From the NCBI GenBank assembly GCA_965655095.1, contig OZ296648.1:161882001-161946000 (forward strand): 64,000 nt of DNA, in the 5' to 3' direction. Position numbers and translations under genes: made by a program. This DNA comes from Haplodiscus bocki. Its lineage: Eukaryota. Positions 1-55,630 of this stretch are shown piece by piece. A model generated the notes under the pieces. The model was given only the letters and a program-made list of their open reading frames with translations, made no database searches and had not been told where the DNA came from. How positions within the stretch are numbered: the first letter of the stretch is position 1; every line of letters begins with the position of its first letter.

Positions 1-429
1 AACAGTATTTTTTTTCAATATTCTCCTGCTTTTTCAATTCTTCATAATTTCTCAAAGTGCTAAATGTTTCGAATTTGTTGGAGCGTGAGAGGGATTTCAC
101 CAGAAAATCTCAAGACCAGCAATTTTGGAACTTCTGAATCAAGTTGCAAAAGCGTTTGAACTTTCAAAGTCCAACTTGACTGTCACTTTTTTTGACATAC
201 ACTTCTTGCCCCTCGATTCTCGCGTTGCCGATAATGCCGAACGTTACAAGTTTTTACAGATTCCACTAAATTTGCCAAACACCAGCTTCACTCATCAGTA
301 CCAAAAAATCTCTTCCTTGAAAAACTTGTAGCTGCTTTCATGATTTTCATTAAAACTGACTGTGCCGAAAGTTGGGGAAAGGTATCGATTTCAAGTATTT
401 TAAAAGGGAAGTTCTGGTGAGCAGCTTCA

Positions 430-6400: not shown

Positions 6401-7900
6401 TGTGGCTGTTGTTTTCAAATCTGCTTAAGGTGTCATTGTATTATTCTTTTATATTTTGCAGTGCAGATTGTAGAGATCGACGATACTATTTGATTTCCAT
6501 CAAATTCATGGGGTTTAAAATTACTGTACTGTGAAAGACTTGTGAAGGTCCTAAAAGATTTTGCCAGGGGTTATAGTGACGATACTTCTGAAAAAATGGT
6601 GGTTTGAATGGATTGTAGAATAGGTTACTAATGAGTTGATTTTTTCCCTGAAAAAAACCACACGTTGAAATTGTCAGATTGTTCCAATTTTCCATGTTTT
6701 TATCTTTTTGAAGTTTATCAAATGAGATCCAAAGCACAGAAAATGTTAGAGACTCTAAAATTTCTCAGAAATGACAGAGATCTTAATCGTTACAATTGGA
6801 AAACCTTGAACCAATTTTGAACATGAAAAGTGGGAATTGCTTCAAATTTCTTCAATCCTTTTCGGTTTGACCTTTTTCCCGACAAAGTCTCACTGTCCCG
6901 AAACGACCACCAAAGATACATCTTCTCGGAAGAATTTCTACAAGCTCTAAAGGTTAGTTTGAAACTAGTTCGCTACGTGGAAACTTACAAAATATCAGAT
7001 TATTTTTTCTTTAATCTGCTGCTTTTTTATTTCTCCATAAAATCTGAAAGTGCCAAAAATTCCGGATTTGTTAAATCGTGATAGGGTTTTCACCAGAATT
7101 TCTCTTCGCGAACAGCAACAAAAAAAACTGTGAATCAACTTGCAGGCGGTTGAACATACAAAGTCTAACTAGACTCTTAGAAATTTTGACAAAAACCTTG
7201 TGCCCGTCGGTTCCCTTGATGCCAATAATGGTCAAAAGTTACAAAATTGCACAGTCTCCATTATCGGTGACTAGGAAGAGCTTAGATCATCAGTATCATA
7301 AAGTGTTTTCTTTGAAATCCTCCAGCTGTTTTCATGGTTTTCATTAGAATTGACTGTGCCGAAGGTTGAGGAAAGGTGCCAAATTCAAGCATTTGTAAAT
7401 CGAGGTTCTTGTGAGCAGCTACACTAAAATCTAGGAATCGAGATCGTTACTTTTAAACATTCCAGTTGTAGCAATCTCTCTCAATGGTTACTTTGTCGGA
7501 ACTTTTCGAACAACTTGCAGGGTGTCAAAAAATCGAAAAGTATAGAAATATTAGGAAACGACATTACCAATCTAATCAACCGAAAAAAAACTTTCGAAAA
7601 AGGTTCAGGTGACAATTTCAAACTGCATTTCTTTTTCTCAAAAGTTTGCTGTTTTCTTTCTCCCCATTAGGCCTCAAATCTGAAATATTCGGGACGGCCA
7701 GACATCCAACTTTTTCTGAAAGTTATATAAAACTTACAAAGAAAAACAGTAGTGAAACAAGTCACTGAGGAGGATGTTTTCACAGAGGAACAGAATTTGT
7801 GAATTTGTGGCTTTTGTTTTCAAATCTGCCTAAGGTGTCATTGTATTATTCTTTTATATTTTGCAGTGCAGATTGTAGAGACCGGCGATACTATTTGATT
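430..7900. repeat. Subfamily A1 block, period 1405-1407 bp (~5 units), sharing a ~130 bp internal deletion
   Basis: Anchor spacings are 1405, 1406, 1407, 1406. Units read GGGGTTTAAAATTACTGTACTGTGAAAGAC where other subfamilies have an extra ~130 bp segment. Block boundaries are approximate. Confidence 0.92.
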
Positions 7901-10900
7901 TCCATCAAATTCGTGGGGTTTAATTTTGAAATTGGTTGCAACCTTTTGACGTTTTTTGGCAAAAAAGTTTTTGTCCATGGAATTTCACAGTGCCAAAACT
8001 GCCGGAATTTTTACCACAAAGAACATTTTACTCCAATAATCTGTCGTACAAACATACTCTTCGTTGGAGAACCTGTGAATGTAGTCATTGGTATTTTCAA
8101 GGCTCACAATGACGACAGTTCCCAAAAAAATAGTGATTTCATTGAATTGCAATTTTGGTTACCTGTGAAATAGTTTTTTATTTCTTTGTTTTCAGAACCG
8201 CACATTCGAATTGTCATACTGTTCCAATTTCTAGTGTTTGTAACTTGTTGAAGCCTTTCAAATCAGAACCAAAGCCCGGAAAGTGTGAGGGACTTTAGAG
8301 CTTCTCAGAATTGATAAAGATGCTAATCGTTAAAATTAAAAAACCTTGAACCAATTTTGAACATGAAAAGTGGGAATTGCTTCAAATTTCTTCAATCTTT
8401 TTCGTTTTCGGTTTTACCTTTTTCCCGACAAAGTTTCACTGTCCCAAAATGACCGCAGAAGATACATCTTCCCAGAAGAATTTCTAGAATTTCTAAAGGT
8501 TAGTTTGAAGCTAGTTCGCTACGTTGAAACTTACACACTATCAGATTATTTTTTCTTTAATCTGCTGCTTTCTTATTTCTCCATAAAATCTGAAAGTACC
8601 AAAAATTCCGGATTTGTTAAATCGTGATAGGGTTTTCACCAGAATTTCCCTTCGCGAACAGCAATAAAAAAAACTGTGAATCAACTTGCAGGCGGTTGAA
8701 CATACAATGTCTAACTAGACTCTTACAAATTTTGACAAAAACTTTTTGCCCCTCGGTTCCCTTGATGCCTACAATGGGGAAAAGTTACAAATTTGCAGTT
8801 TCCATTATCGGTGCACAAGATGAGCCTAAATCATCAGTATCATAAAATCTTTTCTTTGAAATCCTCCAGCTGTTTGCATGGTTTTCATTAAAGTTGACTG
8901 TGCCGAAAATTGAGGAAAGGTGCCAAATTCAAGCATTTGTAAATCGAGGTTCTTGTGAGCAGCTACACTAAAATCTAGGAATCGAGATCGTTACTTTAAA
9001 ACGTTCCAGTTGTAGCAATCTCTCTCAATGGTTACTTTGTCGGAACTTTTCGAACAACTTGCAGGGTGTCAAAAAATCGAAAAGTATAGAAATATTAGGA
9101 AACGACATTACCAATCTAATCAACCGAAAAAAAACTTTCAAAAAAGTTCAGGTGACAATTTCAAACTGCATTTCATTTTCTCAAAAGTTTGCTGTTTTCT
9201 TTCTCCCCATTAGGCCTCAAATCTGAAATATTCGGGACGGCCAGACATCCAACTTTTTCTGAAAGTTATATAAAACTTACAAAGAAAAACAGTAGTGAAA
9301 CAAGTCACTGAGGAGGATGTTTTCACAGAGGAACAGAATTTGTGAATTTGTGGCTTTTGTTTTCAAATCTGCCTAAGGTGTCATTGTATTATTCTTTTAT
9401 ATTTTGCAGTGCAGATTGTAGAGACCGGCGATACTATTTGATTTCCATCAAATTCGTGGGGTTTAATTTTGAAATTGGTTGCAACCTTTTGACGTTTTTT
9501 GGCAAAAAAGTTTTTGTCCATGGAATTTCACAGTGCCAAAACTGCCGGAATTTTTACCACAAAGAACATTTTACTCCAATAATCTGTCGTACAAACATAC
9601 TCTTCGTTGGAGAACCTGTGAATGTAGTCATTGGTATTTTCAAGGCTCACAATGACGACAGTTCCCAAAAAAATAGTGATTTCATTGAATTGCAATTTTG
9701 GTTACCTGTGAAATAGTTTTTTATTTCTTTGTTTTCAGAACCGCACATTCGAATTGTCATACTGTTCCAATTTCTAGTGTTTGTAACTTGTTGAAGCCTT
9801 TCAAATCAGAACCAAAGCCCGGAAAGTGTGAGGGACTTTAGAGCTTCTCAGAATTGATAAAGATGCTAATCGTTAAAATTAAAAAACCTTGAACCAATTT
9901 TGAACATGAAAAGTGGGAATTGCTTCAAATTTCTTCAATCTTTTTCGTTTTCGGTTTTACCTTTTTCCCGACAAAGTTTCACTGTCCCAAAATGACCGCA
10001 GAAGATACATCTTCCCAGAAGAATTTCTAGAATTTCTAAAGGTTAGTTTGAAGCTAGTTCGCTACGTTGAAACTTACACACTATCAGATTACTTTTTCTT
10101 TAATCTGCTGCTTTCTTATTTCTCCATAAAATCTGAAAGTACCAAAAATTCCGGATTTGTTAAATCGTGATAGGGTTTTCACCAGAATTTCCCTTCGCGA
10201 ACAGCAAAAAAAAAACTGTGAATCAACTTGCAGGCGGTTGAACATACAATGTCTAACTAGACTCTTACAAATTTTGACAAAAACTTTTTGCCCCTCGGTT
10301 CCCTTGATGCCTACAATGGGGAAAAGTTACAAATTTGCAGTTTCCATTATCGGTGCACAAGATGAGCCTAAATCATCAGTATCATAAAATCTTTTCTTTG
10401 AAATCCTCCAGCTGTTTGCATGGTTTTCATTAAAGTTGACTGTGCCGAAAATTGAGGAAAGGTGCCAAATTCAAGCATTTGTAAATCGAGGTTCTTGTGA
10501 GCAGCTACACTAAAATCTAGGAATCGAGATCGTTACTTTAAAACGTTCCAGTTGTAGCAATCTCTCTCAATGGTTACTTTGTCGGAACTTTTCGAACAAC
10601 TTGCAGGGTGTCAAAAAATCGAAAAGTATAGAAATATTAGGAAACGACATTACCAATCTAATCAACCGAAAAAAAACTTTCAAAAAAAGTTCAGGTGACA
10701 ATTTCAAACTGCATTTCATTTTCTCAAAAGTTTGCTGTTTTCTTTCTCCCCATTAGGCCTCAAATCTGAAATATTCGGGACGGCCAGAAGACCAACTTTT
10801 TCTGAAAGTTATATAAAACTTACAAAGAAAAACAGTAGTGAAACAAGTCACTGAGGAGGATGTTTTCACAAAGGAACAGAATTTGTGAATTTGTGGCTGT

Positions 10901-12950
10901 TGTTTTCAAATCTGCCTAAGGTGTCATTGTATTTTTCTTTTATATTTTGCAGTGCAGATTGTAGAGACCGGCGATACTATTTGATTTCCATCAAATTTGT
11001 GGGGTTTAATTTTGAAATTGGTTGCAACCTTTTGACGTTTTTTGGCAAAAAGTTTTTGTCCATGGAATTTCACAGTGCCAAAACTGCCGGAATTTTTACC
11101 ACAAAGAACATTTTACTCCAATATTCTATCGTACAAACATACTGTTCGTTGGAAGACTCGTGAATGTAGTCATTGGTTCTTTCAAGGCTCACAATGACGA
11201 AAGTTCCTTAGAAATGATGATTTCATTGAATTACAATTTTGGTTACCTGTGAAAAAGTTTTTTATTTCTTTGTTTTCAGAACCGCATATTCGAATTGTCA
11301 AACTGTTCCAATTTCTAGTGTTTGTAACTTGTTGAAGCCTTTCAAATCAGAACCAAAGCCCGGAAAGTGTGAGGGACTTTAGAGCTTCTCAGAATTGATA
11401 AAGATGCTAATCGTTAAAATTAAAAAACCTTGAACCAATTTTGAACATGAAAAGTGGGAATTGCTTCAAATTTCTTCAATCTTTTTCGTTTTCGGTTTTA
11501 CCTTTTTCCCGACAAAGTTTCACTGTCCCAAAACGACCGCAGAAGATACATCTTCCCAGAAGAATTTCTAGAAGTTCTAAAGGTTAGTTTGAAGCTAGTT
11601 CGTTACGTTGAAACTTAAAAAAAAACAGATTTCTTCTTCATTAATCTGCTGCTTTTTTATTCCTCCATAAAATCTCAAAGCGCCGAAAAATCCGAAGATG
11701 TTAAAGCTTGATAAGGTTTTCACCAGAATTTTTCTTCAAGACCAGCAATAACAAAAACTGTGAATCACCTTCCAGGCGGTTGAACATACAATGTCTAACT
11801 AGACTATTACAAATTTTGACAAAAACTTTTTGCCCCTCGGTTCCCTTGATGCCTATAATGGGGATAAGTTACAAAATTGCAGTTTCCATTATCGGTGCAC
11901 AAGATGAGCCTAAATCATCAGTATCATAAAGTCTTTTCTTTGAAATCCTCCAGCTGTTTGCGTGGTTTTCATTAAAATTGACTGTGCCGAAAGTTGAGGA
12001 AAGGTGCCAAATTCAAGTATTTGTAAATCGAGGTTCTTGTGAGCAGCTACACTAAAATATAGGAATCGAGATCGTTACCTTTAAACGTTCCAGTTGTAGC
12101 AATCTTTCTCAATGGTTACTTTGTCGGAACTTTTCGAACAACTTGCAGGGTGTCAAAAAATCGAAAAGTATAGAAATATTAGGAAACGACATTACCAATC
12201 TAATCAACAAAAAAAAACTTTCAAAAAAGGTTCAGGTGACAATTTCAAACTGCATTACATTTTCTCAAAACCTGGCTGTTTTCTTTCTCCTCATTAGGCC
12301 TCAAATCTGAAATATTCGGGACGGCCAGAAATCCAACTATTTCTGAAAGTTATATAAAACTTACAAAGAAAAACGCTAGTGAAACAAGTCACTGAGGACG
12401 ATGTTTTCACAAAGGAACAGAATTTATGAATTTGTGGCTGTTGTTTCCAAATCTGCCTAAGGTGTTATTGTATTATTCTTTTATATTTTGCAGTGCAGAT
12501 TGTAGAGACCGGCGATACTATTTGATTTCCATCAAATTCGTGGGGTTTAATTTTGAAATTGGTAGCAACCTTTTGATGTTTTTTGGCAAAAAGTTTTTGT
12601 CCATGGAATTTCACAGTGCCAAAATTGCCGGAATTTTTACCACAAAGAACATTTTACTCCAATATTCTGTCGTACGTACAAACATACTGTTCGTTGGAAG
12701 ACTCGTGAATGTAGTCATTGGTTCTTTCAAGGCTCACAATGACGAAAGTTCCTTAGAAATGATGATTTCACTGAATTGTAATATTGGTTACCTTTGAAAT
12801 GTTTTTTAATTTCTTTGTTTTAAGAACCGCACGTTCAAATTGTCAGAACGTTCCAATTTCTAGTGTTTGTAACTTGTTGAAGCTTTTCAACTCAGAACCA
12901 GAGCCCGGAAAGTCCCCGACACTTTCAAGCTTCTCAGAATTGATAAAGAT
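7900..12950. repeat. Subfamily A2 block, period 1542-1544 bp (~3.3 units)
   Basis: Anchor spacings are 1544, 1542, 1542; identical ORFs 7799 and 9342 are offset by 1543 bp. Confidence 0.9.
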
Positions 12951-14199
12951 GCTAATCGTTAGAAACAAAAAACTTTGAACCAAAGTTCAACATGAAAAAT
13001 GGGAATTGATTCAAACTTCCCCAATATTTTTCGGCTTTAATTTTTTTCCCATTAAGTCTGGCGGTCCCAAAAAACCCGCAAAAAATACGTCCCATCAGTT
13101 TTTTTTACAATTTCAAGAGTTTAGCAGCTTTAAACACTTTGAAATTAGTTCAGCAACTTGGAACTTAGAAACCGAAACAGTTTTCCTGTTTTTGCTGTTT
13201 TTCCAATTATTCAATAAATCTTGAAGTGCAGATAATTCCAAAAATGTTAGAGCGTTGCAAGCGCTTCAACAAAGTTTCTCAAGACCAGCCATAATAAAAC
13301 AATTGAATCAACTTCCAAGCGTTTGAACATTCAAAGGCTAACTTCACTTGCTAAGTTTTCCCTCAACACTTTCTGCGCATCCAGTCTCGTGACGCCAACA
13401 GTGGCGAACATTTACAAATTAGCAGAGATTCCACCGAATGAGACAAGCATCAGCTTTACTTTCTTTCTTTTCGAAAACTTTCTTCGTTGAAAAACTTGTA
13501 GCTGGTTCTGATGGTTTTCACCATGTCTGACTGCGCCGAAAGTTGGTGGAAGGCATTCACTTCACAGAAATTTGAATCGAGGTTCTGATGAGCAGCTACA
13601 GAAAAATCTAGGAATTGATATCATGACGTTTAAAAGTATAGGTTATGGCAGTCTTTCTCAGTGGTTACTTTGTCCGAACTATTCAGACGATTTGCAGGCT
13701 GTAGATAAAGTCGGGAACTTTGGAGTTGTTAAGGTGGGACATTAAAATTCCAATCAACAGAAAAAAATAAGTCGTTCATAAAATGTTCAGGTGGCAATTT
13801 CAAACTGCCCTTAGACTTTCTCAACAGGTTGTTGTGTGCTTTCTGGAAATTAAATACAATTTACAAATATAACCAGTATTAAACTCTATGAAACAAGTTC
13901 GTAACAAGGGTACTTTCGAATTGAATCAGAACTTCTGAACGTGTGGCTGTTTTTTTAAATCTGCCTCAGATCTGATTGTTTCATTCTGTCAGATTTTTTA
14001 GTGGAGGTTCCAGAGACTGGTAATTGAATTCATTCGAATCAAATTCATTGGGTTTTACTATTCAATCGATCACAATCTTTTTAATTTTTTTGGCAAACGT
14101 ATTTTGTCCATGGAACCTCAGAATACCGAAACTGCGGGAAATCTTAGAGTTTCTTACATACTTTACCAGAAAGGACTTTCACGCCAAACTTCAGTCGCT

Positions 14200-17100
14200 C
14201 TGAAATACTGTACGTTGAAAGACTTGTGAAGGTCCTCAAAGGTTTTTCCATGGCTCATAGTGGCGATAATTTTGAAAATATGGTGGTTTGAATGGTTTGT
14301 TGTATAGGATACTGATGAATTGATTGTTTTTCTTTGAAATGAAAACCACACGCTTAAATTGTCAGATCGTTCCAATTTCTCGTGTTTTTAACTTTCTCAA
14401 GTTTTTTAAATAGAATCCAGAGCGCGGAAAGTGTCAGAGATTTTGAAGCTTCTCAGAAATTATAAAGTTGCTAATCATTCTAATCATTACAAATTTAAAA
14501 CCTTGAATCAGGTTCCAACATGACAAAAATGGAATTGCTTCAAACTTCCTCAATCTTTTCCGGTTTAATCTTTTTCCCAATAAAGTCTCACGGTCGCAAA
14601 AAAACTGGTGTGATACATCTTCCCAGACGACTTTTTACAAGTTCTAAACCTTAGTTTGAATCCAGTTCGCTACTTTGAAACTTACAAATGCAACAATTTT
14701 TCTCAATTTTGCGCCGCCATTTCAATTCTCCATAAATTCTTAAAGTGCCGAAAGAACCGAAATTGTTACAGCGTGACAGAGGTTTCATCCATTTTTCTCA
14801 ACACTAGCAGTAATGAAACCTATGAAGCAAGTTTCAAGATTTTGAATTTTCAATATCTCTTTTGACTGTCACTTTTTGACAAACACTGTTTCTCGGTTCT
14901 CGCGTTGCCAATGATGAGGAAACGTTACAAATTGGCACAGTTTCCACTAAATTTGCCAAACATCAGCTTTACTCTTAAGTATCAAAAAAAGTTTCGTCGA
15001 AAAAATTGTAGCTGTTTTCATGGTTTTCATCATGGCTGACTGCGCCGAAAGTTATTGGAAGGCATTCATTTCACAGAATTGTGAATCGAGGTTCTGATGA
15101 GCAGCTACAATAAAATCTAGGAATCGAGATCATGACGTTTGAAAAAAACAAGTTTTGGCAGTCTTTCTCAATGGTTACTTTGTCGGAACTATTCAGACAA
15201 TTTACAGGCTGCCGACAAAGTCGGGAACTTTGGAGTTGTTAAGGTGGGACATTAAAATTCCGATCAACAAAAAAAAATAAATTTTTCAAAAAATTGTTCA
15301 GGTAAAAATTTCAAACTGCATTAGACTTTCAGACTTTCTCAAGTGTTTGTTGTGTGCTTTCTGCCCCTGTAGGTCTCAAATCTGAAATAGTCGAAGAGGC
15401 CAGAAACCTAACTCTTTCTGGAAATTAAATACAATATTCAAATATAACCAGTATTAAACTCTATGGAACAAGTTCGTAACAAGGATACTTTCGAAATGAA
15501 TTAGAACTTCTGAAACTTAGGCTGTTTTTTACAGTCCGCGTCAGATCTCATTATAACATTTATTACTTTTTGCAGTGGAGATTCCAAGGACCAGTGATAA
15601 TAATTCAATCCAATCAAATTCGCTGAGTTTAACTATTCAATCGATCACAATCTTTTGAATTTTTTTGGCAAAGGTATTTTGTCCATGGAACCTCAGAGTA
15701 CCGAAACTGCTGGAATTCTTAGGGTTTCTCACAGATTCTATCAGAAGGGACATTTCACTCCAAACTTCAGTCGCTCAAAAATACTGTACGTTGAAAGACT
15801 TGTGAAGGTCCTCAAAGGTTTTTTCAAGAATCATAGTGGCGATATTTCCAAAAAATGGGGTGGTTTGAGTGGATTGTAGTATAGGTTACTGATGAGTTGA
15901 TTGTTTTTCTTTGAAATGAAAGCCGCATTTTTAAATTGTCAGATCGTTCCAATTTCTCGTGTTTTTAACTTTCTCAAGTTTTTTAAATAGAATCCAGAGC
16001 GCGGAAAGTGTCAGGGATTTTGAAGCTTCTCAGAAAATATAAAGTTGCTAATCATTCTAATCATTACAAATTTAAAACCTTGAATCAAGTTCCAACATAA
16101 AAAAATGGAATTGCTTCAAACTTCCTCAATCTTTTCCGGTTTAATCTTTTTCCCGATAAAGTCTCACGGTCGCAAAAAAACTGGTGTGATACATCTTCCC
16201 AGACGACTTTTTACAAGTTCTAAACCTTAGTTTGAATCCAGTTCGCTACTTTGAAACTTACAAAGTGCAACAATTTTTCTCAATTTTGCGCCGCCATTTC
16301 AATTCTTCATAAATTCTTAAAGTGCCGAAAGAACCGAAATTGTTAAAGCGTGACAGAGGTTTCATCCATTTTTCTCAACACCAGCAGTAATGAAACCTCT
16401 GAAGCAATTTTCAAGATTTTGAATTTTCAATATCTTTTTTGACTGTCACTTTTTGACAAACAATTTTTGCCTCTCGGTTCTCCCGTTGCCAATGATGAGG
16501 AAACGTTAAAAATTTGCACAGTTTCCACTAAACTTTCCAAATATCAGCTTTACTCTTAAGTATCAAAAAAAGTTTCGTTGAAAAAATTGTAGCTGTTTTC
16601 ATGGTTTTCATCATGGCTGACTGCGCCGAAAGTTATTGGAAGGCATTCATTTCACAGAATTGTGAATCGAGGTTCTGATGAGCAGCTACAATAAAATCTA
16701 GGAATCGAGATCATGACGTTTGAAAAAAACAAGTTTTGGCAGTGTTTCTCAATGGTTACTTTGTCGGAACTATTCAGACAATTTACAGGCTGCCGACAAA
16801 GTCGGGAACTTTGGAGTTGTTAAGGTGGGACATTAAAATTCCGATCAACAAAAAATATAAATTTTTCAAAAAAATTTTCAGGTAAAAATTTCAAAGTGCA
16901 TTAGACTTTCAGACTTTCTCAAGTGTTTGTTGTGTGCTTTCTGCCCCTGTAGGTCTCAAATCTGAAATAGTCGAAGAGGCCAGAAACCTAACTCTTTCTA
17001 GAAATTAAATACAATATTCAAATATAACCAGTATTAAACTCTATGAAACAAGTTCGTAACAAGGATACTTTCGAAATGAATTAGAACTTCTGAAACTTAG

Positions 17101-20100
17101 GCTGTTTTTTACAGTCCGCGTCAGATCTCATTATAACATTTATTACTTTTTGCAGTGGAGATTCCAAGGACCAGTGATAATAATTCAATCCAATCAAATT
17201 CGCTGAGTTTAACTATTCAATCGATCACAACCTTTTCAATTTTTTTGGCAAAGGTATTTTGTCCATGGAACCTCAGAGTACCGAAACTGCTGGAATTCTT
17301 AGGGTTTCTCACAGATTCTATCAGAAGGGACATTTCACTCCAAACTTCAGTCGCTCAAAAATACTGTACGTTGAAAGACTTGTGAAGGTCCTCAAAGGTT
17401 TTTTCAAGAATCATAGTGGCGATATTTCCAAAAATTGGGGTGGTTTGAGTGGATTGTAGTATAGGTTACTGATGAGTTGATTGTTTTTCTTTGAAATAAA
17501 AACCGCATTTTTAAATTGTCAGATCGTTCCAATTTCTCGTGTTTTTAACTTTCTCAAGTTTTTTAAATAGAATCCAGAGCGCGGAAAGTGTCAGGGATTT
17601 TGAAGCTTCTCAGAAAATATAAAGTTGCTAATCATTCTAATCATTACAAATTTAAAACCTTGAATCAAGTTCCAACATAAAAAAATGGAATTGCTTCAAA
17701 CTTCCTCAATCTTTTCCGGTTTAATCTTTTTCCCGATAAAGTCTCACGGTCGCAAAAAAACTGGTGTGATACATCTTCCCAGACGACTTTTTACAAGTTC
17801 TAAACCTTAGTTTGAATCCAGTTCGCTACTTTGAAACTTACAAAGTGCAACAATTTTTCTCAATTTTGCGCCGCCATTTCAATTCTCCATAAATTCTTAA
17901 ATTGCCGAAAGAACCGAAATTGTTACAGCGTGACAGAGGTTTCATCCATTTTTCTCAACACTAGCAGTAATGAAACCTCTGAAGCAAGTTTCAAGATTTT
18001 GAATTTTCAATATCTTTTTTGACTGTCACTTTTTGACAAACAATTTTTGCCTCTCGGTTCTCCCGTTGCCAATGATGAGGAAACGTTAAAAATTTGCACA
18101 GTTTCCACTAAACTTTCCAAACATCAGCTTTACTCTTAAGTATCAAAAAAAGTTTCGTTGAAAAAATTGTAGCTGTTTTCATGGTTTTCATCATGGCTGA
18201 CTGCGCCGAAAGTTATTGGAAGGCATTCATTTCACAGAATTGTGAATCGAGGTTCTGATGAGCAGCTACAATAAAATCTAGGAATCGAGATCATGACGTT
18301 TGAAAAAAACAAGTTTTGGCAGTGTTTCTCAATGGTTACTTTGTCGGAACTATTCAGACAATTTACAGGCTGCCGACAAAGTCGGGAACTTTGGAGTTGT
18401 TAAGGTGGGACATTAAAATTCCGATCAACAAAAAATATAAATTTTTCAAAAAAATTTTCAGGTAAAAATTTCAAAGTGCATTAGACTTTCAGACTTTCTC
18501 AAGTGTTTGTTGTGTGCTTTCTGCCCCTGTAGGTCTCAAATCTGAAATAGTCGAAGAGGCCAGAAACCTAACTCTTTCTAGAAATTAAATACAATATTCA
18601 AATATAACCAGTATTAAACTCTATGAAACAAGTTCGTAACAAGGATACTTTCGAAATGAATTAGAACTTCTGAAACTTAGGCTGTTTTTTACAGTCCGCG
18701 TCAGATCTCATTATAACATTTATTACTTTTTGCAGTGGAGATTCCAAGGACCAGTGATAATAATTCAATCCAATCAAATTCGCTGAGTTTAACTATTCAA
18801 TCGATCACAACCTTTTCAATTTTTTTGGCAAAGGTATTTTGTCCATGGAACCTCAGAGTACCGAAACTGCTGGAATTCTTAGGGTTTCTCACAGATTCTA
18901 TCAGAAGGGACATTTCACTCCAAACTTCAGTCGCTCAAAAATACTGTACGTTGAAAGACTTGTGAAGGTCCTCAAAGGTTTTTTCAAGAATCATAGTGGC
19001 GATATTTCCAAAAATTGGGGTGGTTTGAGTGGATTGTAGTATAGGTTACTGATGAGTTGATTGTTTTTCTTTGAAATAAAAACCGCATTTTTAAATTGTC
19101 AGATCGTTCCAATTTCTCGTGTTTTTAACTTTCTCAAGTTTTTTAAATAGAATCCAGAGCGCGGAAAGTGTCAGGGATTTTGAAGCTTCTCAGAAAATAT
19201 AAAGTTGCTAATCATTCTAATCATTACAAATTTAAAACCTTGAATCAAGTTCCAACATAAAAAAATGGAATTGCTTCAAACTTCCTCAATCTTTTCCGGT
19301 TTAATCTTTTTCCCGATAAAGTCTCACGGTCGCAAAAAAACTGGTGTGATACATCTTCCCAGACGACTTTTTACAAGTTCTAAACCTTAGTTTGAATCCA
19401 GTTCGCTACTTTGAAACTTACAAAGTGCAACAATTTTTCTCAATTTTGCGCCGCCATTTCAATTCTTCATAAATTCTTAAAGTGCCGAAAGAACCGAAAT
19501 TGTTAAAGCGTGACAGAGGTTTCATCCATTTTTCTCAACACCAGCAGTAATGAAACCTCTGAAGCAATTTTCAAGATTTTGAATTTTCAATATCTTTTTT
19601 GACTGTCACTTTTTGACAAACACTTTTTGCCTCTCGGTTCTCCCGTTGCCAATGATGAGGAAACGTTAAAAATTTGCACAGTTTCCACTAAACTTTCCAA
19701 ACATCAGCTTTACTCTTAAGTATCAAAAAAAGTTTCGTTGAAAAAATTGTAGCTGTTTTCATGGTTTTCATCATGGCTGACTGCGCCGAAAATTATTGGA
19801 AGGCATTCATTTCACAGAATTGTGAATCGAGGTTCTGATGAGCAGCTACAATAAAATCTAGGAATCGAGATCATGACGTTTGAAAAAAACAAGTTTTGGC
19901 AGTCTTTCTCAATGGTTACTTTGTCGGAACTATTCAGACAATTTACAGGCTGCCGACAAAGTCGGGAACTTTGGAGTTGTTAAGGTGGGACATTAAAATT
20001 CCGATCAACAAAAAAAATAAATTTTTCAAAAAATTTTCAGGTAAAAATTTCAAGCTGCATTAGACTTTCAGACTTTCTCAAGTGTTTGCTCTGTGCTTTC

Positions 20101-23100
20101 TGCCCCTGTAGGTCTCAAATCTGAAATAGTCGAAGAGGCCAGAAACCTAACTCTTTCTGGAAATTAAATACAATATTCAAATATAACCAGTATTAAACTC
20201 TATGAAACAAGTTCGTAACAAGGATACTTTCGAAATGAATTAGAACTTCTGAAACTTAGGCTGTTTTTTACAGTCCGCGTCAGATCTCATTATAACATTT
20301 ATTACATTTTGCAGTGGAGATTCCAAGGACCAGTGATAATAATTCAATCCAATCAAATTCGCTGAGTTTAACTATTCAATCGATCACAATCTTTTGAATT
20401 TTTTTGGCAAAGGTATTTTGTCCATGGAACCTCAGAGTACCGAAACTGCTGGAATTCTTAGGGTTTCTCACAGATTCTATCAGAAGGGACATTTCACTCC
20501 AAACTTCAGTCGCTCAAAAATACTGTACGTTGAAAGACTTGTGAAGGTCCTCAAAGGTTTTTTCAAGAATCATAGTGGCGATATTTCCAAAAATTGGGGT
20601 GGTTTGAGTGGATTGTAGTATAGGTTACTGATGAGTTGATTGTTTTTCTTTGAAATAAAAACCGCATTTTTAAATTGTCAGATCGTTCCAATTTCTCGTG
20701 TTTTTAACTTTCTCAAGTTTTTTAAATAGAACCCAGAGCGCGGAAAGTGTCAGGGATTTTGAAGCTTCTCAGAATTTATAAAGTTGCTAATCATTCTAAT
20801 CATTACAAATTTAAAACCTTGAATCAAGTTCCAACATGAAAAAATGGAATTGCTTCAAACTTCCTCAATCTTTTCCGGTTTAATCTTTTCCCCGATAAAG
20901 TCTCACGGTCGCAAAAAAACTGGTGTGATACATCTTCCCAGACAACTTTTTACAAGTTCTAAACCTTAGTTTGAATCCAGTTCGCTACTTTGAAACTTAC
21001 AAAGTGCAACAATTTTTCTCAATTTTGCGCCACCATTTCAATTCTTCATAAATTCTTAAGGCGCCGAAAGAACCGAAAGTGTTAAAGCGTGACAGAGTTT
21101 TCATCCATTTCTCTCAACACTAGCAGTAATGAAACCTCTGAAGCAAGTTTCAAGATTTTGAATTTTCAATATCTTTTTTGACTGTCACTTTTTGACAAAC
21201 ACTTTTTGCCTCTCGGTTCTCCCGTTGCCAATGATGAGGAAACGTTAAAAATTTGCACAGTTTCCACTAAACTTTCCAAACATCAGATTTACTCTTAAGT
21301 ATCAAAAAAAGTTTCGTTGAAAAAATTGTAGCTGTTTTCATGGTTTTCATCATGGCTGACTGCGCCGAAAATTATTGGAAGGCATTCATTTCACAGAATT
21401 GTGAATCGAGGTTCTGATGAGCAGCTACAATAAAATCTAGGAATCGAGATCATGACGTTTGAAAAAAACAAGTTTTGGCAGTCTTTCTCAATGGTTACTT
21501 TGTCGGAACTATTCAGACAATTTACAGGCTGCCGACAAAGTCGGGAACTTTGGAGTTGTTAAGGTGGGACATTAAAATTCCGATCAACAAAAAAAATAAA
21601 TTTTTCAAAAAATTGTTCAGGTAAAAATTTCAAACTGCATTAGACTTTCAGACTTTCTCAAGTGTTTGTTGTGTGCTTTCTGCCCCTGTAGGTCTCAAAT
21701 CTGAAATAGTCGAAGAGGCCAGAAACCTAACTCTTTCTGGAAATTAAATACAATATTCAAATATAACCAGTATTAAACTCTATGGAACAAGTTCGTAACA
21801 AGGATACTTTCGAAATGAATTAGAACTTCTGAAACTTAGGCTGTTTTTTACAGTCCGCGTCAGATCTCATTATAACATTTATTACTTTTTGCAGTGGAGA
21901 TTCCAAGGACCAGTGATAATAATTCAATCCAATCAAATTCGCTGAGTTTAACTATTCAATCGATCACAATCTTTTGAATTTTTTTGGCAAAGGTATTTTG
22001 TCCATGGAACCTCAGAATACCGAAACTGCTGGAATTTTTAGGGTTTCTCACAGATTCTGTCAGAAGGGACATTTCACACCAAACTTCAGTCGCTCAAAAA
22101 TACTGTACGTTGAAAGACTTGTGAAGGACCTCAAAGGTTTTTTCAAGAATCATAGTGGCGATATTTCCAAAAAATGGGGTGGTTTGAGTGGATTGTAGTA
22201 TAGGTTACTGATGAGTTGATTGTTTTTCTTTGAAATAAAAACCGCATTTTTAAGTTGTCAGATCGTTCCAATTTCTCGTGTTCTTAACTTTCTCAAGTTT
22301 TTTAAATAGAATCCAGAGCGCGGAAAGTGTCAGGGATTTTGAAGCTTCTCAGAAATTATAAAGTTGCTAATCATTCTAATCATTACAAATTTAGAACCTT
22401 GAATCAAGTTCCAACATGAAAAAATGGAATTGCTTCAAACTTCCTCAATCTTTTCCGGTTTAATCTTTTCCCCGATAAAGTCTCACGGTCGCAAAAAAAC
22501 TGGTGTGATACATCTTCCCAGACAACTTTTTACAAGTTCTAAACCTTAGTTTGAATCCAGTTCGCTACTTTGAAACTTACAAAGTGCAACAATTTTTCTC
22601 AATTTTGCGCCACCATTTCAATTCTTCATAAATTCTTAAGGCGCCGAAAGAACCGAAAGTGTTAAAGCGTGACAGAATTTTCATCCATTTCTCTCAACAC
22701 TAGCAGTAATGAAACCTCTGAAGCAAGTTTCAAGATTTTGAATTTTCAATATCTTTTTTGACTGTCACTTTTTGACAAACACTTTTTGCCTCTCGGTTCT
22801 CCCGTTGCCAATGATGAGGAAACGTTAAAAATTTGCACAGTTTCCACTAAACTTTCCAAACATCAGCTTTACTCTTAAGTATCAAAAAAAGTTTCGTTGA
22901 AAAAATTGTAGCTGTTTTCATGGTTTTCATCATGGCTGACTGCGCCGAAAATTATTGGAAGGCATTCATTTCACAGAATTGTGAATCGAGGTTCTGATGA
23001 GCAGCTACAATAAAATCTAGGAATCGAGATCATGACGTTTGAAAAAAACAAGTTTTGGCAGTCTTTCTCAATGGTTACTTTGTCGGAACTATTCAGACAA

Positions 23101-26100
23101 TTTACAGGCTGCCGACAAAGTCGGGAACTTTGGAGTTGTTAAGGTGGGACATTAAAATTCCGATCAACAAAAAAAATAAATTTTTCAAAAAATTGTTCAG
23201 GTAAAAATTTCAAACTGCATTAGACTTTCAGACTTTCTCAAGTGTTTGTTGTGTGCTTTCTGCCCCTGTAGGTCTCAAATCTGAAATAGTCGAAGAGGCC
23301 AGAAACCTAACTCTTTCTGGAAATTAAATACAATATTCAAATATAACCAGTATTAAACTCTATGGAACAAGTTCGTAACAAGGATACTTTCGAAATGAAT
23401 TAGAACTTCTGAAACTTAGGCTGTTTTTTACAGTCCGCGTCAGATCTCATTATAACATTTATTACTTTTTGCAGTGGAGATTCCAAGGACCAGTGATAAT
23501 AATTCAATCCAATCAAATTCGCTGAGTTTAACTATTCAATCGATCACAATCTTTTGAATTTTTTTGGCAAAGGTATTTTGTCCATGTAACCTCAGAGTAC
23601 CGAAACTGCTGGAATTCTTAGGGTTTCTCACAGATTCTATCAGAAGGGACATTTCACTCCAAACTTCAGTCGCTCAAAAATACTGTACGTTGAAAGACTT
23701 GTGAAGGTCCTCAAAGGTTTTTTCAAGAATCATAGTGGCGATATTTCCAAAAAATGGGGTGGTTTGAGTGGATTGTAGTATAGGTTACTGATGAGTTGAT
23801 TGTTTTTCTTTGAAATAAAAACCGCATTTTTAAATTGTCAGATCGTTCCAATTTCTCGTGTTCTTAACTTTCTCAAGTTTTTTAAATAGAATCCAGAGCG
23901 CGGAAAGTGTCAGGGATTTTGAAGCTTCTCAGAAATTATAAAGTTGCTAATCATTCTAATCATTACAAATTTAGAACCTTGAATCAAGTTCCAACATGAA
24001 AAAATGGAATTGCTTCAAACTTCCTCAATCTTTTCCGGTTTAATCTTTTCCCCGAAAAAGTCTCACGGTCGCAAAAAAACTGGTGTGATACATCTTCCCA
24101 GACGACTTTTTACAAGTTCTAAACCTTAGTTTGAATCCAGTTCGCTACTTTGAAACTTACAAATGCAACAATTTTTCTCAATTTTGCGCCGCCATTTCAA
24201 TTCTCCATAAATTCTTAAAGTGCCGAAAGAACCGAAATTGTTACAGCGTGACAGAGGTTTCATCCATTTTTCTCAACACTAGCAGTAATGAAACCTCTGA
24301 AGCAAGTTTCAAGATTTTGAATTTTCAATATCTTTTTTGACTGTCATTTTTTGACAAACACTTTTTGCCTCTCGGTTCTCCCGTTGCCAATGATAAGGAA
24401 ACGTTTAATATTTGCACAGTTTCCACTAAATTTTACAAACATCAGCTTTACTCTTAAGTATCAAAAAAGTTTCGTTGAAAAAATTGTAGCTGTTTTCATG
24501 GTTTTCATCATGGCTGACTGCGCCGAAAGTCATTGGAAGGCATTCATTTCACAGAATTGTGAATCGAGGTTCTGTTGAGCAGCTACAATAAAATCTAGGA
24601 ATCGAGATCATGACGTTTGAAAAAAAACAAGTTTTGGCAGTCTTTCTCAATGGTTACTTTGTCGGAACTATTCAGACAATTTACAGGCTGCCGACAAAGT
24701 CGGGAACTTTGGAGTTGTTAAGGTGGGACATTAAAATTCCGATCAACAAAAAAATAAATTTTTCAAAAAATGTTCAGGTAAAAATTTCAAACTGTATTAG
24801 ACTTTCAGACTTTCTCAAGAGTTTGTTGTGTGCTTTCTGCCCCTGTAGGTCTCAAATCTGAAAAAGTCGAAGAGGCCAGAAACCTAACTCTTTCTGGAAA
24901 TTAAAAACAATATTCAAATATAACCAGTATTAAACTCTATGAAACAAGTTCGTAACAAGGATACTTTCGAAATGAATTAGAACTTCTGAAACTTAGGCTG
25001 TTTTTTAGAGTCCTCGTCAGATCTCATTATAACATTTATTACATTTTGCAGTGGAGATTCCAAGGACCAGTGATAAAAATTCAATCCAATCAAATTCGTT
25101 GAGTTTAACTATTCAATCGATCACAATCTTTTGAATTTTTTTGGCAAAGGTATTTTGTCCATGGAACCTCCAAGTACCGAAACTGCTGGAATTCTTAGGG
25201 TTTCTCACAGATTCCATCAGAAGGGACATTTCACTCCAAACTTCAGTCGCTCAAAAATACTGTACGTTGAAAGACTTGTGAAGGTCCTCAAAGGTTTTTT
25301 CAAGAATCATAGTGGCGATATTTCCAAAAAATGGGGTGGTTTGAGTGGATTGTAGTATAGGTTACTGATGAGTTGAGTGTTTTTCTTTGAAATAAAAACC
25401 GCATTTTTAAATTGTCAGATCGTTCCAATTTCTCGTGTTCTTAACTTTCTCAAGTTTTTTAAATAGAATCTAGAGCGCGGAAAGTGTCAGGGATTTTGAA
25501 GCTTCTCAGAAATTATAAAGTTGCTAATCATTCTAATCATTACAAATTTAGAACCTTGAATCAAGTTCCAACATGAAAAAATGGAATTGCTTCAAACTTC
25601 CTCAATCTTTTCCGGTTTAATCTTTTCCCCGATAAAGTCTCACGGTCGCAAAAAAAACTGGTGTGATACATCTTCCCAGACGACTTTTTACAAGTTCTAA
25701 ACCTTAGTTTGAATCCAGTTCGCTACTTTGAAACTTACAAAGTGCAACAATTTTTCTCAATTTTGCGCCGCCATTTCAATTCTTCATAAATTCTTAAAGT
25801 GCCGAAAGAACCGAAATTGTTAAAGCGTGACAGAGGTTTCATCCATTTTTCTCAACACTAGCAGTAATGAAACCTATGAAGCAAGTTTCAAGATTTTGAA
25901 TTTTCAATATCTCTTTTGACTGTCACTTTTTGACAAACACTTTTTGCCTCTCGGTTCTCCCGTTGCCAATGATAAGGAAACGTTTAATATTTGCACAGTT
26001 TCCACTAAATTTCACAAACATCAGCTTTACTCTTAAGTATCAAAAAAAGTTTCGTTGAAATAACTGTAGCTGTTTTCATGGTTTTCATCATGGCTGACTG

Positions 26101-27100
26101 CGCCGAAAGTCATTGGAATGCATTCATTTCACAGAATTGTGAATCGAGGTTCTGATGAGCAGCTACAATAAAATCTAGGAATCGAGATCATGACGTTTGA
26201 AAAAAACAAGTTTTGGCAGTCTTTCTCAATGGTTACTTTGTCGGAACTATTCAGACAATTTACAGGCTGCCGACAAAGTCGGGAACTTTGGAGTTGTTAA
26301 GGTGGGACATTAAAATTCCGATCAACAAAAAAAAATAAATTTTTCAAAAAATTGTTCAGGTAAAAATTTCAAACTGCATTAGACTTTCAGACTTTCTCAA
26401 GTGTTTGTTGTGTGCTTTCTGCCCCTGTAGGTCTCAAATCTGAAATAGTCGAAGAGGCCAGAAACCTAACTCTTTCTGGAAATTAAATACAATATTCAAA
26501 TATAACCAGTATTAAACTCTATGAAACAAGTTCGTAACAAGGATACTTTCGAAATGAATTAGAACTTCTGAAACTTAGGCTGTTTTTTAGAGTCCTCGTC
26601 AGATCTCATTATAACATTTATTACATTTTGCAGTGGAGATTCCAAGGACCAGTGATAAAAATTCAATCCAATCAAATTCGTTGAGTTTAACTATTCAATC
26701 GATCACAATCTTTTGAATTTTTTTGGCAAAGGTATTTTGTCCATGGAACCTCCAAGTACCGAAACTGCTGGAATTCTTAGGGTTTCTCACAGATTCCATC
26801 AGAAGGGACATTTCACTCCAAACTTCAGTCGCTCAAAAATACTGTACGTTGAAAGACTTGTGAAGGTCCTCAAAGGTTTTTTCAAGAATCATAGTGGCGA
26901 TATTTCCAAAAATAGGGTGGTTTGAGTGGATTGTAGTATAGGTTACTGATGAGTTGATTGTTTTTCTTTGAAATAAAAACCGCTTTTTTAAATTTTCAGA
27001 TCCTTCCAATTTCTCGTGTTTTTAACTTTCTCAAGTTTTTTAAATAGAATCCAGAGCGCGGAAAGTGTCAGGGATTTTGAAGCTTCTCAGAAGTTTTAAA
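14200..27100. repeat. Subfamily B1 block, period 1578-1581 bp (~8 units)
   Basis: Anchors at 15099, 16680, 18260, 19840, 21419, 22999, 24577, 26157; diagnostic GTCTCACGGTCGCAAAAAAACTGGTGTG. Confidence 0.92.
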
Positions 27101-39100: not shown

Positions 39101-39200
39101 ATAGTCGAAGAGGCCAGAAACCTAACTCTTTCTGGAAATTAAATACAATATACAATTATAACCAGTATTAAACTCTATGAAACAATTTCGTAACAAGGGT
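27100..39200. repeat. Subfamily B2 block, period 1582-1586 bp (~7.7 units)
   Basis: Anchors at 27737, 29320, 30906, 32488, 34070, 35652, 37234, 38816; diagnostic CACTGTCGCAAATGAACCGGTGTG and duplicated CTTACAAACTTACAAA. Confidence 0.92.
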
Positions 39201-54842: not shown

Positions 54843-54875
54843 TAGTAGTAGAGTAGTGAGCTGATCAGGTGGGGG

Positions 54876-54949
54876 GGTTGAAGACCCTATGTATTCAGAT
54901 AGGCTATAGCGAGCCAAGTCGAGCCAAGAGCCGAGAAGGGTCTTCAACC
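54876..54949. repeat. 13 bp perfect inverted repeat near the element terminus
   Basis: GGTTGAAGACCCT (54876-54888) and AGGGTCTTCAACC (54937-54949), 48 bp spacer. Confidence 0.85.
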
Positions 54950-54962
54950 GTAGCCGAGAGCT

Positions 54963-55038
54963 CTCGGGTGACGTAATACTCGATTCTGATTGGCTGACGA
55001 CTCGGGTTACGTAATACTCAAATTTGATTGGCTGCCGA
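54963..55038. promoter_or_regulatory. 2 x 38 bp direct repeat, each copy with a CRE/ATF-like site and an inverted CCAAT box
   Basis: CTCGGGTGACGTAATACTCGATTCTGATTGGCTGACGA and CTCGGGTTACGTAATACTCAAATTTGATTGGCTGCCGA. The repeat is seen directly; the regulatory role is inferred. Confidence 0.6.
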
Positions 55039-55042
55039 CCGT

Positions 55043-55503: not shown

Positions 55504-55630
55504 AATGTCCCTAAGTACCTAAGTAGTATAGGGGATAGGAGTGTTCACAACGGGGGGGGGTCCTTTGCCAATGTGGGGTTTACAACGGGTCTAATCCTTC
55601 CTTATTTGGATATAGTTTTTGTGGGCCTGC

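What the first reader, a model, noticed from the sequence alone, without database searches (positions are those of the whole stretch)
14700..16330. The 1.58 kb unit is a higher-order repeat: a dimer of ~790 bp halves, possibly 10 x ~158 bp
Seen: colinear matches offset by ~790 bp within one unit, namely TTTTGACAAA (14874) vs TTTTGGCAAA (15663), CGTCGAAAAAATTGT vs CGTTGAAAGACTTGT (~15789), and AGGTT-CTGATGAG (15094) vs AGGTTACTGATGAG (15889). A looser motif (T-run, CCAT...CTCAnAGTGCCGAAA-like) recurs near 14745, 14900, 15040, 15210, 15390, 15570, 15700, 15835, 16000, 16165 and 16322, about ten times per unit. Inference: a nucleosome-sized monomer built into a 5-mer and then a 10-mer. This architecture resembles primate alpha-satellite HORs and makes the array a candidate centromeric or pericentromeric satellite.
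Basis: partly seen in the sequence, partly recalled or inferred. Interest (0 to 1): 0.75.

Follow-up and report, generated by a model that had tools for sequence, protein, structure and literature searches.

The report
Hidden ten-monomer satellite inside a transposon arm
The 1.58-kb repeat really is built from ten very old copies of a ~158-base piece arranged as two five-piece halves, but it lies inside one overgrown arm of a 111-kb jumping-gene copy, so it shows a transposon giving birth to satellite DNA and gives no sign of a centromere.

Summary
Observation confirmed. One unit compared with itself shows nothing above shuffled controls. Profiles built from the three old lineages of the array (64-72% alike) do show the structure: a half-unit peak at z 13.5, smaller peaks near every multiple of ~156 bp, and profile hits at ~790 bp down to E 3e-11, with no reversed decoy below E 0.01. 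A monomer HMM finds exactly ten sites per unit, on average 158 bp apart. All ten pass a leave-one-out test; m8 is the weakest. For seven of ten monomers the best partner is the one five places away.

The same monomer family forms the arms of a dispersed foldback-like transposon, seen as at least 13 inverted pairs that end in (ACT)n. This locus is one such copy: 111,384 bp, with inverted ends (E 8e-51) and a 5/6-matching 6-bp target duplication. Its right arm has grown to about 78 kb of monomer arrays, made of the 54-kb ten-monomer array, a 21-kb array with 8- and 16-monomer periods, and older monomers. A 19-kb virus-like element is inserted between the two arrays.

The ten-monomer unit was found at this locus only. 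A centromere role is untested and nothing supports it. This is a known kind of event (a transposon-derived satellite, as with Tetris). The scan has already reported similar hidden 173-177-bp satellites elsewhere in this genome.

The parts
14717..14875 (+). monomer m1 (159 bp), carries the box CTTAAAGTGCCGAAAG
   Evidence: Iterated monomer HMM, E 5e-28. Left out of training: 25-47 bits, against 4.8 bits or less for decoys.
14876..15012 (+). monomer m2 (137 bp)
   Evidence: E 1e-8. Left out: 9.5-17 bits. Best partner m7.
15013..15179 (+). monomer m3 (167 bp), closest to the genome-wide monomer type
   Evidence: E 6e-26. Left out: 17-41 bits. Its own HMM scores 26-51 bits on monomers of other chromosomes.
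15180..15359 (+). monomer m4 (180 bp)
   Evidence: E 4e-5. Left out: 9-13 bits in lineages C, D and F. Best partner m9, 49%.
15360..15503 (+). monomer m5 (144 bp)
   Evidence: Left out: 10-15 bits. Best partner m10.
15504..15668 (+). monomer m6 (165 bp)
   Evidence: Left out: 12-24 bits in C, D and F. Best partner m1.
15669..15807 (+). monomer m7 (139 bp), box CCTCAGAGTACCGAAAC; deleted in subfamily A
   Evidence: E 2e-11. Left out: 12-27 bits. The alignment shows the deletion in A.
15808..15968 (+). monomer m8 (161 bp), the most decayed
   Evidence: Left out: 10 bits or less, and only in F. Lost when m3 is also left out. Recognised through its ~790-bp partner m3, 49%.
15969..16139 (+). monomer m9 (171 bp)
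   Evidence: E 3e-14. Left out: 3.5-19 bits. Best partner m4.
16140..16296 (+). monomer m10 (157 bp)
   Evidence: E 2e-16. Left out: 3-25 bits.
14717..15503 (+). first five-monomer half (787 bp)
   Evidence: Profile hits at ~790 bp offset with E down to 3e-11. Profile autocorrelation z 13.5 at half the unit.
15504..16296 (+). second five-monomer half (793 bp)
   Evidence: Same evidence as for the first half.
1..52600 (+). array of about 35 ten-monomer units, starting ~1.3 kb before the window. Blocks: A 1-7005 (1405 bp), B 7005-13180 (1543 bp), C 13180-27338 (1580 bp), D 27338-38413 (1582 bp, paired into 3164), E 38413-42700 (deleted variants), F 42700-52600 (1585 bp, partly 4743)
   Evidence: Word offsets, BLAST of one unit against the window, alignment and identity table, left edge in L001.
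52600..54434 (+). old, diverged single monomers of the same family on the right flank of the array
   Evidence: Monomer HMM hits on the + strand, E 1e-12 to 0.02. Position HMMs give only 10-61 bits.
54844..64000 (+). left part of a 19,145-bp virus-like element inserted in the arm. It ends at window coordinate 73,988 and its decayed genes lie on the - strand.
   Evidence: Ends AGTAGTAG... and ...ACTACT, flanks GACTTT and GACCTT. Inverted 30-bp-repeat arms. ORFs conserved in other copies. Observed only.

Best explanation
The 1.58-kb unit is a real higher-order repeat. It consists of ten head-to-tail, same-strand monomers of about 158 bp (137-180 bp) that are now only 34-49% alike, arranged as two five-monomer halves of 787 and 793 bp that descend from one block duplication.

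The monomer does not belong to a private satellite. It belongs to a genome-wide ~160-bp family that forms the long inverted arms of a dispersed, gene-less, foldback-like transposon. Each arm is a ~2-3 kb monomer array capped by a ~550-bp end sequence that finishes in (ACT)n.

The whole locus is one copy of that transposon, 111,384 bp long (window coordinates -12,378 to 99,005). Its left arm keeps 7 monomers. Its right arm grew by repeated unequal exchange or replication slippage into about 78 kb of monomer arrays: first a ten-monomer stretch of already diverged arm monomers was copied as a block about 35 times, then sub-blocks were re-amplified (A, C) and stacked into two- and three-unit repeats (D, F). 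A 19-kb virus-like element later landed in the arm, and beyond it lies a second array with 8- and 16-monomer periods.

Shown here: the repeat layers, the family, the inverted ends and the target duplication. Inferred: the order of events, the mechanism, and that the array is selectively neutral non-coding DNA.
For: - Ten sites per unit and leave-one-out validation against reversed decoys.
- Half-unit and ~156-bp-multiple peaks in the profile autocorrelation.
- 102 off-diagonal + strand profile hits, against 1 on the - strand and 0 in decoys.
- Best partner five places away for seven of ten monomers.
- The monomer HMM finds tandem ~160-165-bp arrays on C2, C3, C4 and C5.
- The array-plus-end module occurs as at least 13 inverted pairs, - copy on the left and + copy on the right, with the end sequence outermost. 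These elements span 8-29 kb, and there are 364 first-look candidates.
- Eight copies share a sharp terminus.
- The left end of this locus (L002 7796-8273) is an inverted repeat of L022 4434-4920, 111 kb away: 499 bp, 75% identical, E 8e-51.
- The flanks read GGCATA and GGCACA.
- Old monomers flank the array on both sides.
- There is no long ORF with a Pfam hit, no tRNA and no Rfam family in the units.
- On C5 another copy carries a 16-kb homogeneous arm array, so arm growth recurs in this family.
Against: - The transposon class is not established: no transposase or integrase was found in the copies read.
- The target duplication matches at only 5 of 6 bases.
- m8 is recognised only through m3.
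- The similarity between the inner part of this copy and that of other copies is weak: 140-190 bp at 76-79%.
- Neutrality is assumed, not shown. No RNA or chromatin data exist.
Confidence: 0.8

Rival explanations
1. The array is a functional centromeric or pericentromeric satellite. Its nucleosome-length monomers and higher-order repeats would bind centromeric chromatin as alpha satellite does.
For: The layout is that of a higher-order repeat, with near-identical young blocks set among older copies and old single monomers at both flanks. Monomer length is 137-180 bp. A short box (GTGCCGAAA-like) stays recognisable in otherwise decayed monomers.
Against: The ten-monomer unit was found at one locus only. 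The array is 54 kb long and lies inside one transposon copy with intact ends. No family member was found in the flanking samples. The same monomers sit in hundreds of short dispersed transposon arms. There are no chromatin data.
Confidence: 0.06
2. The sub-periodicity is chance similarity in A+T-rich DNA, and the 1.58-kb unit has no internal repeats.
For: Single-unit autocorrelation, half-against-half alignment and word offsets are all within the shuffled range.
Against: Profile tests with reversed decoys and the opposite strand as controls. Independent recovery of tandem arrays on other chromosomes with an HMM trained on this window only.
Confidence: 0.01
3. The monomers encode a structured RNA, for example a hammerhead ribozyme as in newt or cricket satellites. 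The CTGATGAG and CGAAA motifs would be its core.
For: CTGATGAG at 15094 and 15889, and a GAAA box in most monomers. A weak Hammerhead_II match at 15043-15110: 18.4 bits, E 1.4.
Against: The score is half the gathering threshold of 37. The F unit gives no match and nothing in the whole window reaches gathering thresholds. The CTGATGAG word is TTGTGAG, TAATGAG or CTGTGAA in lineages A, B and F, and TAATGAG or TAATGAC in the family at large. The 9-bp inverted repeat around it does not covary.
Confidence: 0.02
4. The array length or order is an assembly artefact, a collapsed or over-extended repeat.
For: Long near-identical repeats are hard to assemble. Only short contigs of public runs could be laid on it.
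Against: Units differ in an ordered, block-wise way, with six sub-families and distinct lengths. Two samples of one study hold the words at high depth. Unique ends and a target duplication frame the whole structure.
Confidence: 0.05

Closest known systems
Tetris / Foldback (FB) transposons of Drosophila and the satellites born from their arms (PMC4079207)
   Same: Long inverted arms built from internal tandem repeats with a unique terminal sequence. There are dispersed copies whose arm length varies, and the arm repeats expand into long tandem arrays that behave as satellite DNA.
   Different: Here the expansion is seen within a single copy that still has both ends and its target duplication. 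The expanded arm is organised in at least four nested layers: 158 bp, 790 bp, 1580 bp, then 3160 or 4743 bp. The ends are AGT/ACT triplets with a poly-G tract and a 6-bp duplication, unlike FB. No sequence similarity to Tetris was tested.
Primate alpha-satellite higher-order repeats
   Same: Monomers of nucleosome-like length lie head to tail on one strand. A multimer of diverged monomers is repeated with much higher identity than the monomers share, old single monomers lie at the flanks, and monomer types are shared between loci.
   Different: The monomers are far more diverged (34-49% alike; for alpha satellite I recall about 60-80%). The array is 54 kb at one locus, not megabases on every chromosome. 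It is split into three lineages only 64-72% alike and lies inside a transposon arm. Centromere association is unknown.
Transposon-derived satellites in general (reviews PMC10048060, PMC5615363; PMC5932611)
   Same: The same repeat is found both dispersed in mobile elements and as long local arrays, and arrays seeded by a transposon then grow by unequal exchange.
   Different: PMC5932611 describes arrays seeded by double insertions of whole elements. Here the seed is the element's own internal tandem repeat.
Polinton/Maverick elements and their gene-less derivatives
   Same: Ends read 5'-AG...CT-3', here (AGT)n and (ACT)n. There is a 6-bp target duplication, long inverted ends and a size of 8-20 kb. 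These hallmarks are recalled from my own knowledge of the Polinton literature. A neighbouring 19-kb virus-like element has similar ends with a poly-G tract.
   Different: No protein-primed polymerase, integrase, protease or capsid domain was detected by Pfam or PHROGs in any copy read. Only a language-model lead points to a viral minor-capsid-like protein. Membership is therefore open.

Membership tests
Higher-order-repeat satellite (alpha-satellite-like architecture) | Unit made of several head-to-tail monomers of one family on one strand | tested here: met
   Ten sites per unit, spaced 137-180 bp, all on the + strand.
Higher-order-repeat satellite (alpha-satellite-like architecture) | Copies of the multimer are much more alike than the monomers within it | tested here: met
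   Monomers are 34-49% alike. Units are 97-100% alike within blocks A and C, 90% between C and D, and 64-72% between lineages.
Higher-order-repeat satellite (alpha-satellite-like architecture) | The monomer family also exists outside the higher-order unit | tested here: met
   Flanking old monomers, a 16-kb homogeneous array on C5, and short arrays on C2, C3 and C4.
Centromeric satellite | Binds centromeric histone or lies at the primary constriction | not testable with these tools
   No chromatin or cytological data exist, and no RNA runs either.
Centromeric satellite | Long arrays of the same unit at one place on each (or most) chromosomes | tested here: not met
   Unit-length matches occur only at C1:161.88-161.93 Mb. 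Elsewhere the matches are single monomers of 190 bp or less. The census is a lower bound.
Foldback-like transposon with tandem-repeat arms (FB/Tetris-like) | Long inverted terminal arms | tested here: met
   At least 13 inverted pairs in the genome. This copy: 499 bp, 75% identical, E 8e-51 between its two ends.
Foldback-like transposon with tandem-repeat arms (FB/Tetris-like) | Arms made of tandem repeats, capped by a shared unique end | tested here: met
   13-21 monomers followed by a ~550-bp end sequence in L010-L015. The terminus is sharp in eight copies.
Foldback-like transposon with tandem-repeat arms (FB/Tetris-like) | Target-site duplication at the insertion | tested here: inconclusive
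   GGCATA and GGCACA, 5 of 6 bases, for the one copy with both ends in hand. The chance of at least 5 of 6 at a fixed place is about 0.005.
Foldback-like transposon with tandem-repeat arms (FB/Tetris-like) | A transposase, in this copy or in an autonomous partner | tested here: not met
   No ORF of 120 aa or more with a family hit in the copies read. A partner was not searched for genome-wide.
Polinton/Maverick | Protein-primed DNA polymerase B and retroviral-type integrase | tested here: not met
   No Pfam or PHROG hit in the gene-less element, in the neighbouring virus-like element, or in the ENA copy L030.
Polinton/Maverick | 5'-AG...CT-3' ends, inverted ends, 6-bp target duplication | tested here: met
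   AGTAGTAGT... and ...ACTACT ends, with 6-bp flanks matching 5/6, for both elements. That these features define the family is from memory.
Hammerhead-ribozyme satellite | Conserved catalytic core with helices I-III scoring above the Rfam threshold | tested here: not met
   18.4 bits against a threshold of 37 in one lineage, none in F, and the core is not conserved.

The most novel reading that the evidence does not exclude
A gene-less element family with Polinton-like ends carries arms made of nucleosome-length monomers, and these arms act as a genome-wide nursery of higher-order satellites. That would make it the common source of several of the hidden ~160-177-bp satellites this scan has met in this genome. 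On this reading the reiterated GTGCCGAAA-like box is the binding site of the mobilising integrase or transposase, or of a host chromatin protein, and that is why it survives in monomers that are otherwise near random.
Probability: 0.25. Interest if true: 0.6.

Novelty: new member of a known kind. Interest (0 to 1): 0.45.

Why it matters
It is an unusually clean picture of a satellite being born. One transposon copy still has both ends and its target duplication, while one arm has grown about thirty-fold into layered higher-order repeats. This lets the source, the order of the layers and the rough ages be read from a single locus.

It also gives two practical warnings. Kilobase macrosatellites can hide nucleosome-length monomers that a self-comparison of one unit cannot see but lineage profiles can. 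And an alpha-satellite-like layout is not in itself evidence of a centromere.

Tried and rejected
- Single-unit ungapped autocorrelation, half-against-half alignment and 6- to 8-mer offset counts gave no signal. They are not sensitive enough at 34-49% identity with indels of up to 43 bp between monomers.
- TRF with a maximum period of 500 misses the array.
- A first profile run gave strong hits at an offset of -1471 columns. These were an artefact of one misaligned truncated unit (E3). It was removed and the run repeated.
- Hammerhead or other RNA family: rejected. tRNA origin: none found.
- Coding potential of the units: only 90-124-aa ORFs, without Pfam hits.
- 'The monomer arrays are the inverted ends of the virus-like element': rejected. 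That element has its own ends and target duplication, it is hyper-abundant (about 13,000 first-look candidates), and most array-bearing elements lack its genes.
- An exact-box pattern census was not attempted, because only one monomer in four to six keeps GCCGAAA.
- A whole-genome search with the sequence-only model R1 failed twice.
- The class of the virus-like element stays open after Pfam, PHROGs, the large protein search and a gene-context look-up. All were uninformative.
- Laid contigs show only that two samples hold the words at high depth. They give no copy number and no spanning piece.
- Organism names are coded.
Full report
**What is in the window.** Word offsets show that window 1-52,600 is one tandem array with periods of 1,405, 1,543, 1,580-1,586 bp and some deleted variants. 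There are further offsets at two units (3,158-3,168) and three units (4,743-4,746). One unit (14,700-16,279) matches the whole stretch on the + strand at identities from 70% to 98%. An alignment of 19 units resolves three old lineages. AB is 72% like CD, and F is 64-66% like both. Within lineages there are young blocks at 90-100%. The genome is a 1.5-Gb eukaryote, and the window is C1:161,882,001-161,946,000 of a 197.9-Mb sequence. The units have no ORF with a Pfam hit, no tRNA and no Rfam family at gathering thresholds.

**Checking the observation.**
- The circular ungapped autocorrelation gives z 2.3 at lag 790 and z 0.4 at lag 158. The best lag (335, z 3.5) is no better than the best lag of dinucleotide shuffles.
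- A local alignment of the two halves scores 28, against 25.3 +/- 2.9 for shuffles, and is not even colinear.
- Counts of shared 6- to 8-mers by offset are unremarkable.

**Profile tests.** The three lineages are independent samples of the ancestral unit, so I used them as a profile. HMMs were built from 170-column slices of the alignment and searched against nine representative units and their reversed (not complemented) copies. One misaligned unit had produced artefacts in a first run and was removed.
- At E<1e-4 there were 102 off-diagonal hits on the + strand, 1 on the - strand and none in the decoys.
- The offsets cluster at about 810 alignment columns (about 790 bp), 310-320, 500 and 680, and also 980. 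These correspond to 5, 2, 3, 4 and 6 times about 158 bp.
- The ~790-bp hits are colinear over 14,786-15,337 and 15,573-16,135, with a best E of 3e-11.
- A lineage-weighted profile autocorrelation over 1,566 columns gives z 13.5 at lag 783, exactly half the unit. It gives z 5.2 at 303, 4.4 at 480, 3.8 at 619 and 3.3 at 155, against a 95% null maximum of about z 4.
- After smoothing over +/-6 columns, all five multiples (about 160, 308, 466, 618 and 780) exceed the null maximum.

**The ten monomers.** An HMM seeded on the first ~165 columns and iterated recruited no decoy (best decoy E 0.47). It ended with ten sites per unit, in C1 starting at 14,717, 14,876, 15,013, 15,180, 15,360, 15,504, 15,669, 15,808, 15,969 and 16,140. 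The spacings are 137-180 bp with a mean of 158.

Iteration can be circular, so I left out each position in turn, in all lineages, retrained and scored it.
- Decoys never exceeded 4.8 bits.
- m1, m3, m7 and m10 reach 20-47 bits.
- m2, m4, m5, m6 and m9 reach 9-24 bits.
- m8 reaches 10 bits or less, and only in lineage F.

With both a position and its partner five places away left out, m1, m2, m3, m7 and m10 still score 9-43 bits, m4, m5, m6 and m9 score 5-11 bits, and m8 is lost. In a joint alignment the monomers are 34-49% alike. The best partner is the monomer five places away for 2/7, 3/8, 4/9 and 5/10 and for m6. For m1, m7 and m10 that partner falls within 0.5-3 points of the best. So both claims hold: two halves of five monomers, and ten monomers of about 158 bp. 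m8 is the only member recognised solely through its partner.

**The monomer family elsewhere.** Searches of the genome with whole units found unit-length matches only at this locus. They also found short monomer-sized matches on C2, C3, C4 and C5. I fetched those places and scanned them with the monomer HMM trained on this window only. Every one holds a head-to-tail array of 160-165-bp monomers, with E down to 1e-21 and decoys at 0.11 or worse.
- Five places hold 13-21 monomers (2-3 kb).
- C5:36.316-36.333 Mb holds a homogeneous 16-kb array.

Position-specific HMMs show that the dispersed arrays are also made of unlike monomers. In four or five of them a run of m7-like, m3-like, m9/m4-like and m1/m5-like monomers recurs in the same order as in each half of the unit. 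This suggests, but does not prove, that the five-monomer order is older than this locus. Old single monomers of the family also flank the array on both sides, at L001 6,844-8,608 and window 52,600-54,434.

**What carries the monomers.** The dispersed loci share sequence beyond the arrays, in particular a ~550-bp piece ('R') on one side. A genome search with array plus R returned 364 first-look candidates. Among the 40 scored there were at least 13 inverted pairs, always the - copy on the left and the + copy on the right with R outermost, spanning 8-29 kb. Aligning eight ends shows about 330 bp of shared terminal sequence with a poly-C tract. It stops sharply after ...CTACTACT, beyond which the copies are unrelated. 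This is the anatomy of a foldback-like transposon whose arms are tandem repeats. No transposase was found in the copies read.

**This locus is one such copy.**
- About 10 kb left of the array, L002 holds R and 7 monomers on the - strand.
- To the right of the window lies a 19,145-bp insertion, then 3.6 kb of other sequence, then a second + strand array of the same family at C1:161,959,632-161,980,506, with periods of 1,276 and 2,554 bp. R on the + strand follows it.
- The left end (L002 7,796-8,273) is an inverted repeat of L022 4,434-4,920, 111 kb away: 499 bp, 75% identical, E 8e-51.
- The element runs from C1:161,869,622 (AGTAGTAGTAAT...) to C1:161,981,005 (...CTACAACTACT), which is 111,384 bp. 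It is flanked by GGCATA and GGCACA.
- Samples 20-100 kb to the left and 40-270 kb to the right hold no member of the family.

The simplest reading is that one arm of one transposon copy grew from a few kilobases to about 78 kb of monomer arrays. The C5 copy, whose R ends bracket the 16-kb array, shows that this happens repeatedly.

**The inserted element.** From window 54,844 to coordinate 73,988 lies an element with ends AGTAGTAGAGTAGTGAGC... and ...ACTACTCGACTACT, a poly-G tract, inverted arms of 30-bp repeats and flanks GACTTT and GACCTT. Its decayed ORFs are conserved at 58-77% in two other copies. One 219-residue piece has about 13,000 first-look candidates in the genome, many within intact 279-residue frames. 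Neither Pfam nor PHROGs recognises any of its genes, here or in an ENA contig copy. A language-model comparison points to viral proteins, including a virophage minor-capsid family, which is a lead only. I only observed this element and made no consensus of it. Its ends resemble those of the array-bearing element. From memory, AG...CT ends with 6-bp duplications are Polinton/Maverick hallmarks, but with no polymerase or integrase detected, membership is open.

**Mechanism and rivals.** Shown here: the nested periods, the family, the inverted ends and the duplication. Inferred: growth by unequal exchange or slippage in the order monomers, five-monomer block, ten-monomer unit, array, re-amplified blocks (A at 99-100%, C at 97-98%), then two- and three-unit stacks.
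- Centromere reading: it keeps only its architectural resemblance. The unit is single-locus, short and inside a transposon. It cannot be excluded without chromatin data.
- Ribozyme reading: rejected. The only match is 18.4 bits against a threshold of 37, it is absent from lineage F, and CTGATGAG is a local variant of the family's TAATGAG.
- Public runs: two samples of one study hold the words at high depth, but only as short contigs, and no RNA run was found.

**Comparison with what is known.** The closest described case is Tetris, a foldback transposon of Drosophila virilis whose internal tandem repeats became a satellite (PMC4079207). Reviews describe many repeats that live both in mobile elements and as arrays (PMC10048060, PMC5615363). 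This locus is therefore a new member of a known kind. It is notable for showing source and product in one intact copy, and for the depth of nesting.

**Earlier notes of this scan.** They report similar hidden 173-177-bp satellites with nested repeats in this genome. One of them has units that also sit in small transposon-like elements. Another describes a gene-less element with (AGT)3 ends and long inverted arms. I did not compare sequences with those findings.

Noticed in passing
window 54,844-64,000 and on to window coordinate 73,988 (L016): A 19,145-bp virus-like element with AGTAGTAG.../...ACTACT ends, a poly-G tract, 30-bp-repeat inverted arms and a 5/6-matching 6-bp target duplication. 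One of its ORFs has about 13,000 first-look candidates in the genome, many of them intact, yet no gene has a Pfam or PHROG hit. Its class is open. Observed only.
   Followed up: partly
C1:161,959,632-161,980,506 (L017 3,632 to L022 4,506): A second array of the same monomer family in the same transposon arm, organised in 1,276-bp (8-monomer) and 2,554-bp (16-monomer) higher-order repeats.
   Followed up: partly
L009-L010 (C5:36,316,600-36,332,824): A 16-kb fairly homogeneous array of ~162-bp monomers, all closest to type m3, bracketed by the transposon end sequences at C5:36,304,173 (-) and C5:36,332,663 (+). This is a second case of an overgrown arm.
   Followed up: partly
L020+L014+L018+L019 (C3:91,883,001-91,923,000), local 14,397-28,512: Inverted monomer arrays (77% alike over ~1 kb) bracket an ~11-kb copy of the virus-like element. 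The right arm lacks the end sequence. This is probably an insertion of the abundant element into a foldback-like copy.
   Followed up: partly
L027 (C1:162,086,001-162,096,000), L028 (C1:162,126,001-), L008 (C1:161,782,001-): Unrelated macrosatellites with periods of about 2,457, 2,514 and 1,349 bp lie within 250 kb of the window. None matches the monomer HMM.
   Followed up: no
window 7,799-8,173, 9,342-9,716 and 12,426-12,797: Subfamily B units each carry a 123-124-aa ORF on the + strand without any Pfam hit. This is most likely a chance frame in repeated DNA.
   Followed up: partly
window 38,413-42,700: Block E holds three units with different internal deletions (about 1,499, 1,288 and 1,500 bp) at the border between lineages CD and F. 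It may mark an old junction or breakpoint of the array.
   Followed up: no
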